A stretch of 63,925 nt of DNA, counting the filler, from Octopus bimaculoides (taxonomy: Eukaryota), in the NCBI RefSeq assembly GCF_001194135.2. It is 6 parts of 6 records of this genome, joined end to end, with 100 filler letters (N's around TTAATTAATTAA, not from the genome) between each part and the next. Parts side by side here need not be neighbours in the genome. Positions count along the whole stretch, not along the records: positions 1 to 26,814 come from NC_068995.1; 5 more parts are not named here. One strand, 5' to 3'. Below the pieces are notes generated by a model. The model saw only the letters and a program-made list of their open reading frames with translations, was not told where the DNA came from and searched no databases. Below, in pieces: positions 15,539 to 18,904 of this stretch. The translations under genes and the position numbers were made by a program. Every line of letters begins with the position of its first letter. Position 1 is the first letter of the stretch.

Positions 15539-18500
15539 ATGAACTTCCCGTTGCTTTTTGTTTTGTCATTGGCAATCCTTTCTGCTTCTGCCGTCCTCTC
15601 TAGCATACGCACTACACCAAACGAATGCAATAAATGTAGAACAGCGAGTCACTGCAGTCTGCCAAACTGCTCCTGCTGCGGCCATACAATCCCCGGCAAA
15701 AAGTCCCAAAGACCTCAGTTGGTTTACTTCTCGTTCGACGATGCAGTGACAGTTCGAAATTCTCCTCTTTATGTAGAATTATTCAATAAAAGCCGCACAA
15801 ATCCAAATAAGTGCCCAATCGCAATGACTTTGTTCGTGTCGCATAACGATACCGATTACGGCTTGGTGAAGCAGTTCTATGACCACGGAATGGATATAGC
15901 AGTGCATGGCATCAATCATATAAGATCACTGAATGCTCTTCAGTTTTCATACGAAGCACTCGGTCAACGGTTAAACCTTGCCAATCGATCGAAGATACCC
16001 AAAGAAGAAATTGTCGGTTTCAGAAGTCCGTATTTAATAGCTTACGGAAACGAACAGTTTGAAATACTGAGTAAGGCAGGTTTTGCCTATGATTCAACTT
16101 TGACTATCACCAAAAGGTCACTGATTGAAGAATCCCCAGTTCCATTTACAATGGATTATAGTTGGCCATATCCTTGCAGCATTCCCGAATGTCCGACCGA
16201 AAATATTCAAGGATTCTGGGAAGTACCTATCGTGACAGTGCTTGACAAATTGGCTCGTTATCCTTGCGTCTATGTGGACGGATGTGCGAATTCACCAACA
16301 AACGAAGAAGAATCATTCAATTTCTTGCTGGAAAATTTCATGAGTTACTACACTATGAACAAGGCACCATTTGGCTTGAACATGCATTCAACATGGTTGT
16401 TACAAGAATATGAGACGAACCCATATCGAATGAAAGCCATGCACCGATTCTTAGACTATATCCTCGGCCTCAATGACGTTTATGTTGTTAACATTAAACA
16501 GATTGTGGAGTGGATGAAGCACCAACCATCGTTAAATGAGTTGTCCAAATTTGCTCCGTTTCAATGTCAGAACCAAACCAACGGTTACCAAAACGGAACC
16601 ACCATTTCGCCAGAACAAACAAACAACTCCCCAAATCAAACCACCAGTTCCATAAACCAATCCTCCAGTTTCCCAAACCAAACCATAGTCTCTGTAGAAA
16701 CGATTTCGTCAACGAAACTAGTAACAACAGTCTTGATGGAAGAAATCACTACAAACGCGATGATGTCACAAAACACGGAAGAGAACAATAACAATGACCC
16801 GAGCGCAAAGTTAGAATCGCTGCAAACCCAACAAGTTTCTAATAATTTTGTAACAGAAGGATATAATTTGCAATCAACACCAGCTCAAACCCAACCTATC
16901 GGTAATAGTTTCATTTCAACAAGAGAAATAATTCACTCGACATTGTCACCTTCGAATACAACCAGTCGAAACAAATTACAAAATATTTCTCAAACGACAC
17001 TGACTCCACTGAATGAGTCTGCTGTGACGTTGACAACTTCCTATCAGACCTCTAATTCTATACCAACTAATATTCTCCATAAACGGTCACTGAAAAGTAA
17101 TAATTCACTTGAAAACAGACACAAATTCGAATTCCTTGAAGTTATTTCTGAGGGAAGTGCAGCCGAGGAAAATTCAGATATCAAGAAGCCAAGAAGCTTA
17201 CCTATTCAAAGCAATTATAACATGAACATACAAAACATAAATGAAAATGACCAAAGTTATATTGGCACTAGTAGACATTCACTTCAAAGTGTTTTTCATA
17301 GAAAATCAAACTTATTCCGAGTGGCGGCCAGCCTGGTAATGAAAAATGATAAGGAGCTAGAAATGATAATTACGAAAGATGCGTCTAACCACGATAGCGC
17401 TGCGATATTAGTTGCAAAGAATAATTCGATAGACAGGCAACTTCTTACAAATAAGGATTACCGTGAGCCGGTAATATTAATTCACAACAGACAGCAGAAA
17501 TTGGACTATGAAAACAGTTTGAAGAAGTTAAACGTTGTGAAACCGTTGACAACAATGAGAAATTTATTGAAATCTAAAATAACCAAAATTTGTCCATTTG
17601 AAAAATTAGAAATTCCATCATTAGAAACAGTTAAAATACTTTCACCGAAAAAAGAAGCTATTTTATCTAAAAAGGCCGAAATTCTTCCATTAGAAAGGGG
17701 ACAATATTTAAAAGCAAAATACTCTGATTTAAGAAAAACTTTCTTGGATTTTACTACTGGAATAAATATTTACAACAGATATAAAAATAAAAGTGTTGGT
17801 CAGCGAAATATTCTTCCAAGTAGATATACAAAATCCGCTTTATTGCCAGGCTTTGTGAAATCTCGAGAATTTTCGTCAGACCCACTAGATGAACATTTGG
17901 GACTTAGTAGTAGTAGTAGCAGCAACAGCAGTCCTTCGAAATCAAATGACGACAGCAATGTACCAGTTTCGGAATCCTGTCAACAAGGGAAGAACTGCTT
18001 TAAACCAGATTGTCAATGTTACCAATTCCATATCCCAACAACATCGAAGAAAATTCCTCAATTCGTTTATTTCACTTACGAAGGATCTGTTAATTCTTCT
18101 ATTACTGAAAAACTTAAAGGCCTTTTTCATGCCGGAAGGTTAAATGCAAATGGTTGCCGGATTAAAAGCACCTTATTTGTCACATCGGAAGGATCTAATT
18201 ATACCGCTATTAAAGAGCTTTACGACGAAGGAATGGAAATCGCATTACATGGTTTAAAAAAGAAGAATCTGGTCGGTAATCTTTTAAATATGGAAATTGC
18301 TCTGCAAAAATATTTGCTTAACCGATATGCTAATGTATCTCATGACAAAATATTTGGCTGGAGAAATATTGATCTTCAATCGAAAGGAGACGTTCAGTTT
18401 GAAAATTTGCAAAATAGTAAGATGCTGTACGATTCGTCGCTGTTTGTAATGACAAATTTAGAGAATAGGACAGGAATTTGGCCGTCTACCTTAGACTTTG

Positions 18501-18904
18501 GTTGGAAGAAAAACTGTTTGCTACAACAGTGTCCTACTAAAAACTTTAAGGGTCTCTGGGAAGTCCCTGCTGTTCCTTATGTTGGAATTAAGAAAAGGTA
18601 TTTGTGTAAATTTGTAGACAGTTGCTATAACAAACCCCAGACTGCGGTGCAAACCTATGATCTGCTTCTAAGTAATTTCATGGCATTTTACAAAAGAGAT
18701 CGAACGCCTTTTGGTGTTCGCTTGCGATCGGACTGGTTTTTACCGAACAACGAAGAAAACCTCAAAGGTTTAAACGCTTTCCTAGGACTGGTTGAAGAAT
18801 TGTCCGATGTATACATTGTCAGTGTGAAAGGATTAATTGACTGGATGAAAGACCCGGTACTTCCTGAGCACGATAACCTTACAGCTTCAAAGATAGGCTG
18901 TTGA
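15539..18904 (+). CDS. Secreted 1121-aa double-domain chitin-deacetylase-like protein: active-type CE4 domain, S/T/N/Q stalk, basic linker, inactive-type CE4 domain
   Basis: Uninterrupted ORF with signal peptide MNFPLLFVLSLAILSASA. Domain 1 (about aa 30-343) has SFDD (D67, D68), HGINH (H123, H127), GFRSPY (R162), YDST, WEVP and PFGLNMH (H283), so all five CE4 motifs are present. Domain 2 (about aa 814-1121) has the same scaffold but TYEG, HGLKK, WRNID and PFGVRLR. Confidence 0.95.
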   Translation: MNFPLLFVLSLAILSASAVLSSIRTTPNECNKCRTASHCSLPNCSCCGHTIPGKKSQRPQLVYFSFDDAVTVRNSPLYVELFNKSRTNPNKCPIAMTLFVSHNDTDYGLVKQFYDHGMDIAVHGINHIRSLNALQFSYEALGQRLNLANRSKIPKEEIVGFRSPYLIAYGNEQFEILSKAGFAYDSTLTITKRSLIEESPVPFTMDYSWPYPCSIPECPTENIQGFWEVPIVTVLDKLARYPCVYVDGCANSPTNEEESFNFLLENFMSYYTMNKAPFGLNMHSTWLLQEYETNPYRMKAMHRFLDYILGLNDVYVVNIKQIVEWMKHQPSLNELSKFAPFQCQNQTNGYQNGTTISPEQTNNSPNQTTSSINQSSSFPNQTIVSVETISSTKLVTTVLMEEITTNAMMSQNTEENNNNDPSAKLESLQTQQVSNNFVTEGYNLQSTPAQTQPIGNSFISTREIIHSTLSPSNTTSRNKLQNISQTTLTPLNESAVTLTTSYQTSNSIPTNILHKRSLKSNNSLENRHKFEFLEVISEGSAAEENSDIKKPRSLPIQSNYNMNIQNINENDQSYIGTSRHSLQSVFHRKSNLFRVAASLVMKNDKELEMIITKDASNHDSAAILVAKNNSIDRQLLTNKDYREPVILIHNRQQKLDYENSLKKLNVVKPLTTMRNLLKSKITKICPFEKLEIPSLETVKILSPKKEAILSKKAEILPLERGQYLKAKYSDLRKTFLDFTTGINIYNRYKNKSVGQRNILPSRYTKSALLPGFVKSREFSSDPLDEHLGLSSSSSSNSSPSKSNDDSNVPVSESCQQGKNCFKPDCQCYQFHIPTTSKKIPQFVYFTYEGSVNSSITEKLKGLFHAGRLNANGCRIKSTLFVTSEGSNYTAIKELYDEGMEIALHGLKKKNLVGNLLNMEIALQKYLLNRYANVSHDKIFGWRNIDLQSKGDVQFENLQNSKMLYDSSLFVMTNLENRTGIWPSTLDFGWKKNCLLQQCPTKNFKGLWEVPAVPYVGIKKRYLCKFVDSCYNKPQTAVQTYDLLLSNFMAFYKRDRTPFGVRLRSDWFLPNNEENLKGLNAFLGLVEELSDVYIVSVKGLIDWMKDPVLPEHDNLTASKIGC
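16568..16693 (+). repeat. Six 7-aa (21-bp) coding repeats directly after the active CE4 domain
   Basis: QNQTNGY|QNGTTIS|PEQTNNS|PNQTTSS|INQSSSF|PNQTIVS. Each unit contains an N-x-S/T sequon. Confidence 0.8.

What the first reader, a model, noticed from the sequence alone, without database searches (positions are those of the whole stretch)
15539..18904. Single polypeptide joining an active and a dead CE4 domain across a 470-aa spacer
Seen: the order is signal peptide, active CE4 (aa 30-343), S/T/N/Q-rich stalk (to about aa 513), K/I/L-rich basic region, poly-Ser hinge (SSSSSSNSSPS), then dead CE4 (aa 814-1121). Inference: this resembles an anchor-and-arm enzyme in which the dead domain holds the fibre while the catalytic head works at a distance, analogous to CBM-linker-catalytic layouts of carbohydrate-active enzymes.
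Basis: partly seen in the sequence, partly recalled or inferred. Interest (0 to 1): 0.72.

Follow-up and report, generated by a model that had tools for sequence, protein, structure and literature searches.

The report
Octopus chitin deacetylase with dead twin
This octopus gene encodes one secreted protein with a working-looking chitin deacetylase domain at the front, a long floppy linker, and a copy of the domain at the back that lost its catalytic residues; molluscs have kept this layout since before octopuses, snails and clams diverged, so the dead copy must do something, probably non-catalytic.

Summary
Window 15539..18904 (+) is one uninterrupted 1121-codon ORF in Octopus genomic DNA. It encodes a signal peptide, a CE4/NodB domain with all 7 catalytic residues (D1, aa 30-343), a spacer of about 470 aa that AlphaFold2 predicts as disordered, and a second CE4 domain (D2, aa 814-1121) with only 3 of the 7.

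It is not an octopus oddity. More than 35 bivalve, gastropod and cephalopod proteins share the layout. All dead C-terminal domains form one clade (bootstrap 192/200), so the domain lost its catalytic residues before these classes split. D2 is as constrained as D1 (dN/dS 0.14 vs 0.13; spacer 0.54).

A neighbouring paralogue (8305..10833) keeps only the dead domain under constraint. D2 therefore has a function of its own.

The "anchor-and-arm" reading is plausible but unproven. No chitin binding is shown, and linker length is free to vary (21-1036 aa). An abalone shell proteome table already lists a chitin-deacetylase-like protein with two NodB domains. I found no paper that describes the dead domain.

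Verdict: a real feature and a new variant of a known kind, namely a modular carbohydrate enzyme carrying a pseudoenzyme module. Interest is moderate.

The parts
15539..15625 (+). Start codon and hydrophobic N-terminal signal-like peptide (aa 1-29, MNFPLLFVLSLAILSASAVLSS...)
   Evidence: Read directly from the sequence. Mean Kyte-Doolittle 2.37 over aa 3-20. AF2 predicts a helix at aa 4-23. No SignalP-type tool was run.
15626..16567 (+). D1: CE4/NodB chitin deacetylase domain (aa 30-343) with all catalytic motifs intact (FSFDD, HGINH, FRSPY, VYVDG, LNMHS) and 12 Cys
   Evidence: PDB phmmer hit to BmCDA8 5z34, E 2.5e-54. Pfam PF01522. 7 of 7 catalytic positions kept. pLDDT about 80-97. dN/dS 0.13 and 0.10.
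16568..17077 (+). S/T/N/Q-rich stalk (aa 344-513) with 9 N-glycosylation sequons. Contains about one copy of the unit that is expanded to 42 nt x 14.3 in O. sinensis
   Evidence: Composition. pLDDT about 28. dN/dS 0.67 and 0.50. Tandem repeat in L001 11092-11687 and a weak 21-nt repeat at window 16571-16685.
17078..17905 (+). Basic K/L/I/S-rich part of the spacer (aa 514-789). A few short predicted helices and sequence islands are conserved among cephalopods (NLFRVAASL, PVILIHN)
   Evidence: Net charge +16. pLDDT below 50 except aa 651-662. Conserved islands in alignment A1. dN/dS 0.45 and 0.29. No Pfam hit for the whole spacer.
17906..17938 (+). Poly-Ser hinge SSSSSSNSSPS (aa 790-800)
   Evidence: Read directly from the sequence.
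17978..18901 (+). D2: catalytically dead CE4/NodB domain (aa 814-1121) with FTYEG, HGLKK, WRNID, KFVDS, VRLRS. 10 Cys are conserved with D1
   Evidence: PDB phmmer hit to 5z34, E 2.6e-42. 34% identical to D1. 3 of 7 catalytic positions kept. pLDDT about 80-95. dN/dS 0.14 and 0.135. Belongs to the mollusc-wide C-domain clade.
18902..18904 (+). Stop codon
8305..10833 (+). Neighbouring tandem paralogue: signal-like N-terminus, about 525 aa of poorly constrained sequence, and a C-terminal dead CE4 domain (about 9886-10830; FTFDG, YGLSN, WRNVH, VRLRK). It bears on what D2 does
   Evidence: tblastn. Motifs. Sister to the cephalopod D2 domains, bootstrap 198/200. dN/dS 0.23 for the dead domain and 0.64 for the N-terminal part, against P0082. 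The same gene order occurs in another cephalopod contig, L004.

Best explanation
This is a single-exon gene for a secreted, modular chitin deacetylase. It belongs to an old molluscan family.

Shown:
- One ORF encodes a signal peptide, an N-terminal CE4 domain with the full Asp-His-His metal triad plus base and acid residues, a low-complexity linker of about 470 aa that is predicted disordered, and a C-terminal CE4 domain lacking the metal-binding Asp, one or both metal-binding His and the catalytic-acid His.
- The dead domain type arose once, before cephalopods, gastropods and bivalves diverged. It has been kept under purifying selection as strong as that on the live domain.

Inferred:
- D1 removes acetyl groups from chitin in an extracellular chitinous matrix. 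In an octopus that could be the beak, radula, stylets, sucker lining or gut cuticle. In shelled relatives it is the shell matrix.
- D2 is a pseudoenzyme that keeps the CE4 fold and part of the cleft (the motif-1 carboxylate, the motif-3 Arg, the motif-4 Asp and the WPxTLDFGW loop) but cannot bind Zn. It acts as a non-catalytic polysaccharide-binding or matrix-scaffolding module. It keeps the enzyme in, or cross-links it to, the chitin or chitosan network.
- The glycosylated, fast-evolving linker is a flexible tether or matrix filler, not a ruler of fixed length.
For: - Uninterrupted ORF and stop-codon statistics.
- Both domains are homologous to insect CDAs. The AF2 model has both domains at high confidence and its best Foldseek hit is 5z34, TM 0.77, rmsd 2.0.
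- The motif definitions come from the BmCDA1/BmCDA8 structures (PMC6463723).
- N-type domains keep the catalytic residues in 96-100% of sequences. In C-type domains the Zn-binding Asp is replaced by Gly in 86%, and both Zn-binding His positions and the acid His position are unconstrained. The base Asp is kept in 78% (Glu in cephalopods), the motif-3 Arg in 86%, the motif-4 Asp in 100%, and the Cys pattern is retained.
- The C-domain clade is monophyletic in 192 of 200 bootstraps.
- dN/dS for D1, D2 and spacer is 0.13, 0.14 and 0.54 against O. sinensis, and 0.10, 0.135 and 0.29-0.50 against a second octopod.
- The linker has pLDDT about 28.
- The paralogue retains only the dead domain under constraint.
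- A Haliotis mantle transcript with a signal sequence and two NodB domains yields a protein found in the nacre and prismatic shell layers (PMC6003135).
- No CBM14/ChtBD2 domain is present, unlike most insect CDAs, so some other part must do the targeting.
Against: - No result here shows that D2 binds chitin or any sugar.
- The BmCDA8 subsite residues Q125 and S241 have no conserved counterpart in D2. Q125 falls in a deletion (alignments).
- D1 activity is inferred from motifs only. BmCDA1 has all the motifs yet needs an accessory protein for activity (PMC6463723).
- There are no expression or protein data for the octopus gene.
- Cleavage in the linker cannot be excluded.
- Linker length is not conserved, which weakens any role for distance.
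Confidence: 0.55

Rival explanations
1. The precursor is cut in the linker after secretion. The mature products are two separate proteins: an active CDA carrying the glycosylated stalk, and a basic protein ending in the dead CE4 domain. The dead half works independently, as the neighbouring dead-only paralogue does.
For: The decapodiform orthologues carry perfect furin-type sites in the linker: RRKR in P0003 and RHKR in P0004. The octopus protein has dibasic KR, KK and RK sites, for example LHKR|S at about aa 515. The paralogue lineage shows that a stand-alone dead domain is viable: WINup, P0082, and Argonauta P0089 at 396 aa.
Against: The octopus linker has no RX[KR]R site. The furin-type sites do not align with a conserved dibasic site across cephalopods in alignment A1. 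Most bivalve and gastropod linkers lack such sites, or have them only inside R/Q-rich coils. The fusion has been maintained in one frame across three molluscan classes, which is hard to explain if linkage did not matter.
Confidence: 0.15
2. D2 is a regulatory pseudoenzyme that contacts D1 or another CDA or matrix protein and switches on or shapes catalysis, rather than anchoring to chitin. This would resemble the accessory-protein requirement of BmCDA1, or the way the non-catalytic C-terminal domain of PgaB completes the substrate cleft.
For: BmCDA1 needs CPAP3-A1 for activity, and the association of the two PgaB domains is proposed to create the substrate-binding cleft during deacetylation (PMC6463723). 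D2 is as constrained as D1 over its whole length, not only in the cleft: 46 columns are conserved in both domain types. Active-plus-dead tandem CE4 pairs recur in Hydra, a nematomorph and others.
Against: A disordered linker of 470 to about 1000 aa is unnecessary for an intramolecular partner. The dead-only paralogue has no live partner on its own chain. No inter-domain contact information (PAE) was available from the model.
Confidence: 0.15
3. D2 has acquired a new, metal-independent catalytic activity on another substrate, so it is not really dead.
For: A carboxylate at the base position (Asp or Glu), the motif-3 Arg and the motif-4 Asp are retained. Purifying selection is strong.
Against: The positions of both Zn-binding His and the acid His are filled by many different residues across the clade. 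The commonest residue reaches only 19%, 27% and 35%. That is the pattern of an abandoned active site, not a remodelled one. The positions conserved only in the C clade do not cluster at the catalytic motifs.
Confidence: 0.05
4. Artefact: two adjacent genes or a pseudogene were fused by assembly or by chance, and the spacer is not coding.
For: The window comes from a gappy assembly with six N runs. The O. sinensis RefSeq model splices out part of the linker.
Against: There is no N run inside the ORF. The chance of no stop in 470 codons is 8e-15. The same single ORF is found in independent assemblies of four other cephalopods and as a single exon in a scallop. Spacer dN/dS is below 1 and its frame is preserved. 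The spliced-out stretch in O. sinensis is an in-frame 42-nt minisatellite.
Confidence: 0.02

Closest known systems
Insect chitin deacetylases of the CE4 family, especially BmCDA8 (group V, PDB 5Z34) and BmCDA1 (5ZNS)
   Same: Both D1 and D2 are clear homologues (E 1e-54 and 1e-42; Foldseek TM 0.77). They share the animal-type NodB barrel with C-terminal loops and the same disulfide-rich N-terminal cap. D1 has the same five motifs and metal triad.
   Different: Insect CDAs have one CE4 domain, and groups I-IV add CBM14 and/or LDLa modules. This protein has no CBM14 or LDLa. Instead it carries a second, catalytically dead CE4 domain behind a very long disordered linker.
Molluscan shell-matrix chitin deacetylase-like proteins (Haliotis laevigata idb_6290 with two NodB domains; Sinohyriopsis (Hyriopsis) cumingii CDA isoforms; Lottia 181237)
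   Same: Same phylum, and for the two-NodB abalone entry very probably the same family. They are secreted and found inside a chitin-protein matrix (PMC6003135, PMC6542584, PMC3374290). The named homologues include Haliotis, Pecten, Mizuhopecten, Ruditapes, Sinanodonta, Mercenaria, Babylonia, Nucella, Elysia and Plakobranchus proteins.
   Different: Those reports list the proteins in tables without noting that the second domain lacks catalytic residues. An octopus has no mineralised shell, so the target matrix must be different. Whether idb_6290 is orthologous to this gene was not tested.
CE4 pseudoenzymes of bacteria and microsporidia (Bacillus anthracis BA3943, BA0330 and BA0331; Encephalitozoon cuniculi EcCDA)
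   Same: CE4 fold with missing catalytic residues, retained for a structural or binding role. The BA3943 entries appear among the Foldseek hits. BA0330 and BA0331 lack activity and stabilise the cell wall (PMC4505593).
   Different: Those are stand-alone proteins with no specific relationship to D2. Here the pseudoenzyme is fused to a live copy of the same domain, and the pair has been conserved across a phylum.
CBM-linker-catalytic layout of carbohydrate-active enzymes, and GH18 chitinase-like lectins
   Same: A plausible functional analogy: a non-catalytic sugar-recognising module tethered by a glycosylated disordered linker to a catalytic module. A dead enzyme fold reused as a binder is what chi-lectins are (my own knowledge, not tested here).
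   Different: D2 belongs to no CBM family, and its binding is untested. The order here is catalytic-linker-dead domain, with a linker far longer and more variable than typical CAZyme linkers.
E. coli PgaB (CE4 deacetylase plus non-catalytic GH-like C-terminal domain)
   Same: A CE4 deacetylase whose partner domain is a catalytically silent glycan-handling fold that helps hold the polymer (as summarised in PMC6463723).
   Different: In PgaB the two domains pack together to form one cleft, and the silent domain is not a CE4 copy. Here the domains are separated by about 470 disordered residues.

Membership tests
CE4 / NodB-homology chitin deacetylase (domain D1) | NodB (beta/alpha)7 barrel fold | tested here: met
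   AF2 pLDDT 80-97 over aa 30-343. Best Foldseek hits for the whole model are 5z34, 5zns and 5znt, TM 0.73-0.77. The output does not say which domain aligned, so assignment to D1 rests on sequence: phmmer E 2.5e-54 to 5z34 and Pfam PF01522 above its cut-off.
CE4 / NodB-homology chitin deacetylase (domain D1) | Asp-His-His metal triad plus catalytic base Asp, motif-3 Arg, motif-4 Asp and catalytic acid His (motifs 1-5) | tested here: met
   D67, D68, H123, H127, R162, D247 and H283 are all present. The definitions come from PMC6463723. One deviation: motif 2 is HGINH in cephalopods instead of HS(V/I)TH.
CE4 / NodB-homology chitin deacetylase (domain D1) | Measured de-N-acetylation of chitin or chito-oligomers | not testable with these tools
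   This needs recombinant protein and an assay.
CE4 / NodB-homology chitin deacetylase (domain D2, as an enzyme) | Asp-His-His metal triad and catalytic acid His | tested here: not met
   The equivalent residues are E848, G849, H904, K908, R942, D1027 and R1063. Only 1 of 3 metal ligands is kept and the acid His is lost. The same loss is seen across 37 C-type domains.
CE4 pseudoenzyme (domain D2) | CE4 fold retained | tested here: met
   phmmer E 2.6e-42 to 5z34 over aa 808-1108. pLDDT 80-95 and the same order of secondary-structure elements as D1.
CE4 pseudoenzyme (domain D2) | Catalytic residues lost, yet the sequence is kept by selection | tested here: met
   dN/dS 0.14 and 0.135. The clade is monophyletic across three molluscan classes.
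CE4 pseudoenzyme (domain D2) | Absence of deacetylase activity shown experimentally | not testable with these tools
   This needs an enzyme assay and a metal analysis.
CBM-linker-catalytic modular CAZyme | A module from a recognised carbohydrate-binding module family | tested here: not met
   Pfam finds only PF01522 in the whole protein and nothing in the spacer. There is no CBM14/ChtBD2, which the insect hits P0055-P0077 do carry.
CBM-linker-catalytic modular CAZyme | Flexible low-complexity linker between the modules | tested here: met
   aa 345-810 have pLDDT below 50, apart from one short helix. The composition is S/T/N/Q-rich with 13 sequons in the linker.
CBM-linker-catalytic modular CAZyme | The non-catalytic module binds the insoluble substrate | not testable with these tools
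   This needs a binding assay.
Insect CDA groups I-IV | CBM14 chitin-binding domain, with or without an LDLa domain, N-terminal to the CE4 domain | tested here: not met
   No PF01607 or LDLa hit.
Molluscan two-NodB CDA-like family (defined here from homologues) | Live N-type CE4, low-complexity linker and dead C-type CE4 in one protein, with the C domain inside the C clade | tested here: met
   Domain maps, motif table and tree. 33 of 37 N domains score 7/7 and 37 of 38 C domains score 4/7 or less.

The most novel reading that the evidence does not exclude
The C-type dead CE4 domain may define a mollusc-wide family of CE4-derived chitin or chitosan lectins (pseudo-deacetylases) that predates the split of cephalopods, gastropods and bivalves. 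These would organise chitin-protein matrices such as shell, pen, beak and radula. They occur both tethered to a live deacetylase and, in cephalopods, as stand-alone proteins whose own live domain has decayed. This would be the CE4 counterpart of the GH18 chitinase-like lectins, and a so far unrecognised component of molluscan matrix assembly.
Probability: 0.35. Interest if true: 0.7.

Novelty: new variant of a known kind. Interest (0 to 1): 0.5.

Why it matters
Chitin deacetylases tune the stiffness, charge and protein-binding of chitin scaffolds. In molluscs such scaffolds template the shell, pen, beak and radula.

Most insect enzymes are targeted by CBM14 modules. The molluscan enzymes lack these, and how they find and stay on their substrate is unknown.

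A dead copy of the catalytic domain has been conserved since before the cephalopod, gastropod and bivalve lineages split, and it is retained even when the live copy is lost. That makes it a concrete candidate for the targeting or scaffolding function. If D2 binds chitin or chitosan, it would be a new kind of polysaccharide-binding module derived from CE4. It could serve as a probe or fusion tag for chitin and chitosan materials, and it would be an entry point for studying matrix assembly.

If D2 does not bind polysaccharide, the family is still a clean natural example of long-term retention of an enzyme-pseudoenzyme pair.

Tried and rejected
- **mRNA evidence from Logan contigs.** L002 and L003 end in microsatellites and look genomic. 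L006-L008, from three runs, have ragged shared ends that suggest transcripts. But they are collinear with genomic L004 and show no intron, so they cannot be told apart from DNA. The gene is also single-exon in scallop, so splicing cannot be used as a test anywhere.
- **Homologue search with the paralogue.** Low-complexity words filled the candidate list and only 2 hits came back. The exhaustive profile search recovered the family instead.
- **Is the paralogue's N-terminal region a decayed CE4 domain?** The support is weak: hmmsearch E 5e-4 over two targets and hhalign P 0.034. I report it as tentative.
- **A conserved furin site in the linker.** One is present in the decapodiform orthologues but not in octopus, and it does not align consistently.
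- **Mapping BmCDA8 subsite residues onto D2.** These residues are not conserved even in D1, so the test is uninformative.
- **Other searches.** Rfam found nothing in the window. Pfam found nothing in the spacer or in the other small ORFs.
- **Literature.** Six searches found no paper discussing a dead second NodB domain in molluscs. The Nautilus shell-matrix paper does not mention deacetylases.

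
Full report
**What the window is.** The piece is AT-rich (about 35% G+C), full of microsatellites and broken by six N runs. Its longest ORF product is 94% identical to Octopus sinensis LOC118766574. It is therefore nuclear DNA of an Octopus species close to, but distinct from, O. sinensis (dS about 0.09).

**Check of the observation.**
- Window 15539..18904 (+) is a single ORF of 1121 codons. It has no stop in frame, against 54-90 stops in the other five frames.
- From base composition, the chance of an open frame is 2e-34 for the whole ORF and 8e-15 for the 470-codon spacer alone. 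No assembly gap lies inside it.
- The N-terminal domain D1 (aa 30-343) matches the crystal-structure sequences of Bombyx chitin deacetylases BmCDA8 (5z34, E 2.5e-54) and BmCDA1 (5zns), and Pfam PF01522.
- The C-terminal domain D2 matches the same structures at E 2.6e-42. It is 34% identical to D1 (E 4e-67).
- The motif definitions come from the BmCDA1/BmCDA8 structure paper (PMC6463723): motif 1 TFDD holds the base Asp and the Zn-binding Asp, motif 2 HSxxH holds two Zn-binding His, motif 3 holds an Arg, motif 4 an Asp, and motif 5 the acid His. On these definitions D1 keeps 7 of 7 residues: FSFDD, HGINH, FRSPY, VYVDG, LNMHS.
- D2 keeps 3 of 7: FTYEG, HGLKK, WRNID, KFVDS, VRLRS.
- An AlphaFold2 model built on a 35-sequence alignment gives pLDDT 80-97 for both domains and about 28 for aa 345-810. 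Its best structural matches are the insect CDAs (TM 0.77, rmsd 2.0 Å).

**The layout is a mollusc-wide family.**
- The homologue search returned 81 proteins. Thirty-six of them, all molluscan where a source names the organism, have two CE4 domains separated by a low-complexity linker. The named ones come from bivalves (Sinanodonta, Potamilus, Ruditapes, Pecten, Mizuhopecten, Mercenaria), gastropods (Haliotis, Babylonia, Nucella, Plakobranchus, Elysia) and cephalopods.
- An exhaustive profile search added about 25 further two-domain cluster representatives.
- In the first homologue set, 33 of 37 N-terminal domains score 7/7 at the catalytic positions and 37 of 38 C-terminal domains score 4/7 or less.
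- Column by column, the catalytic residues are 96-100% conserved in N-type domains. In C-type domains the Zn-binding Asp is Gly in 86%. The two Zn-binding His positions and the acid His position are filled by many residues, the commonest reaching only 19%, 27% and 35%.
- The base carboxylate, the motif-3 Arg (86%), the motif-4 Asp (100%), ten cysteines and 46 structural columns are retained in C-type domains.
- In a neighbour-joining tree all C-type domains form one clade, separate from all live molluscan domains. Bootstrap support is 192/200. The domain therefore lost its catalytic residues once, before these classes diverged, and has been kept ever since.

**Selection.**
- Against O. sinensis, dN/dS is 0.13 for D1, 0.14 for D2 and 0.54 for the spacer.
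- Against a second octopod (P0002) it is 0.10 for D1, 0.135 for D2, 0.50 for the stalk and 0.29 for the basic part.
- D2 is thus as constrained as the live domain. The spacer is coding but loosely constrained, with a few islands conserved among cephalopods.
- Linker length ranges from 21 to 1036 aa across the family, with T/P-, Q-, S/N- or P-rich compositions.
- In O. sinensis the stalk carries a 42-nt (14-codon) minisatellite in 14.3 copies where the window has about one. The RefSeq model skips it as an intron.
- Linker length is therefore clearly not tuned.

**Gene structure and transcript evidence.**
- The gene is a single exon in the window, in another cephalopod contig (L004) and in the scallop Mizuhopecten. 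Splicing therefore cannot separate the domains.
- Direct evidence for one mRNA is indirect in octopus: only the RefSeq model.
- In the abalone Haliotis laevigata, a mantle transcriptome contig (idb_6290, assembled with IDBA-tran) encodes a signal sequence and two NodB domains. Its protein was detected in both the nacre and the prismatic shell layers (PMC6003135).
- Short-read contigs from public runs could not be classed as RNA or DNA.

**The neighbour.**
- About 4.7 kb upstream in window coordinates, with a 909-N gap of unknown true size in between, lies a paralogue on the same strand at 8305..10833. Its only recognisable domain is a C-terminal dead CE4, 40% identical to D2.
- That domain is sister to the cephalopod D2 domains (198/200) and is under purifying selection (dN/dS 0.23). 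The roughly 525-aa N-terminal part is nearly free (0.64).
- The same gene order occurs in another cephalopod contig. There the upstream protein (P0097, 1245 aa, on the same contig as P0003) still has two recognisable CE4 domains, both degenerate.
- The Argonauta counterpart (P0089) is a 396-aa dead-only protein.
- A profile of N-type domains hits the octopus paralogue's N-terminal region only weakly.
- The simplest reading is that a duplicate of the two-domain gene lost its live domain while keeping the dead one. The dead domain therefore has a function that does not require a live partner on the same chain.

**How it most likely works.**
- Shown: a secreted-looking protein with a catalytically competent-looking CE4 head, a disordered tether rich in glycosylation sequons, and a conserved CE4 pseudoenzyme tail.
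- Inferred: D1 deacetylates chitin in an extracellular matrix. D2 can no longer hold zinc but keeps the fold and part of the cleft. It serves as a non-catalytic polysaccharide-binding or scaffolding module that retains or cross-links the enzyme in the matrix. The linker is a flexible, variable filler.
- The rivals are cleavage of the linker into two independent proteins, a regulatory pseudoenzyme partner for D1 or other CDAs, a new activity in D2, and artefact. The last is essentially excluded.
- None of the functional claims about D2 is tested here. Model coordinates and PAE were not available for mapping the cleft.

**Comparison with what is known.**
- D1 is a member of the animal CE4 chitin deacetylases by fold and motifs. 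Its activity is untested.
- D2 fails the catalytic membership test. It fits the CE4 pseudoenzyme category, of which bacterial examples are known: BA3943 appears among the fold hits, and BA0330 and BA0331 are described in PMC4505593.
- Unlike most insect CDAs there is no CBM14 or LDLa module.
- Functional analogies are CBM-linker-catalytic CAZymes, GH18 chi-lectins and PgaB. D2 is a member of none of these.
- Tandem CE4 pairs with one dead member also occur in Hydra, a nematomorph and an unnamed animal sequence. These appear to be independent of the molluscan clade, but I did not place them on a tree.
- Six literature searches found no discussion of the dead second domain in molluscs. The only trace is the "NodB (2x)" entry in an abalone proteome table.

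**Verdict.** The feature is real, ancient and conserved. It is a new variant of a known kind. The anchor-and-arm mechanism is plausible and easy to test, but unproven. Interest is moderate (0.5).

Noticed in passing
window 8305..10833 (+): A tandem paralogue whose only intact domain is a C-terminal dead CE4 (dN/dS 0.23). Its ~525-aa N-terminal region is F/Y/I/N/K-rich, nearly unconstrained (dN/dS 0.64) and may be a decayed CE4 domain plus linker (hmmsearch E 5e-4, hhalign P 0.034). The window's own annotated protein (P0083) is only 599 aa, starting at an internal Met. The decapodiform counterpart P0097 has two degenerate CE4 domains, and Argonauta P0089 is a 396-aa dead-only protein.
   Followed up: partly
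L001 11092..11687 (O. sinensis orthologue); window 16571..16685: The stalk carries a 42-nt (14-codon, PNQTTSSINQxSSF) minisatellite in 14.3 copies in O. sinensis, against about one copy in the window. The RefSeq model LOC118766574 treats it as an intron, so the real O. sinensis protein may be about 180 aa longer than annotated.
   Followed up: partly
L009 2001..5339; L004 10001..12943; window 15539..18904: The two-domain gene is a single uninterrupted exon in octopus, in another cephalopod and in the scallop Mizuhopecten. This is unusual for a 3-kb metazoan coding sequence and suggests that an intronless state is ancestral for the family.
   Followed up: partly
proteins P0109/P0212 (Hydra vulgaris), P0104 (Gordionus), P0110 (unnamed), P0084 (unnamed), P0100 (Strigamia): Tandem CE4 domains recur in other animal phyla. 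Hydra, the nematomorph and P0110 each pair one live with one degenerate domain. P0084 has four live domains and a C-terminal hydrophobic, transmembrane-like tail. The centipede protein has two live domains. I did not determine whether the dead domains arose independently.
   Followed up: partly
proteins P0030 and P0098: A mollusc-like group with the reverse polarity: the N-terminal domain is degenerate (HTDTP, MMG), the C-terminal domain is live, and the linker is only 21 aa. Both domains fall in the live clade, so this is a separate, younger tandem duplication. The P0030 cluster has 502 member sequences in public runs.
   Followed up: no
window 15905..15919: In all cephalopod orthologues motif 2 of the live domain is HGINH, whereas every other molluscan N-type domain has HS(V/I)(T/S)H. 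The Ser-to-Gly change is shared with the invariant Gly of the dead C-type domains.
   Followed up: no
window 1620-1754, 2959-3048, 12772-13680, 14850-15002, 24086-24327, 24720-24729: Six assembly gaps (N runs). Several are flanked by (TA)n/(TG)n-type microsatellites that generate spurious ORFs of the YIYIYI type. The 909-N gap between the paralogue and the main gene hides the true intergenic distance: in O. sinensis no paralogue lies within 8 kb upstream.
   Followed up: partly
L006, L007, L008: Contigs of about 3.7 kb from three unrelated public sequencing runs carry the full decapodiform orthologue. The real ORF is 967 aa and starts at MEKLVWLLL, not the 882 aa that was called. The contigs share slightly ragged 5' and 3' ends, as transcripts would, but they cannot be distinguished from genomic DNA because the gene has no intron.
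   Followed up: partly
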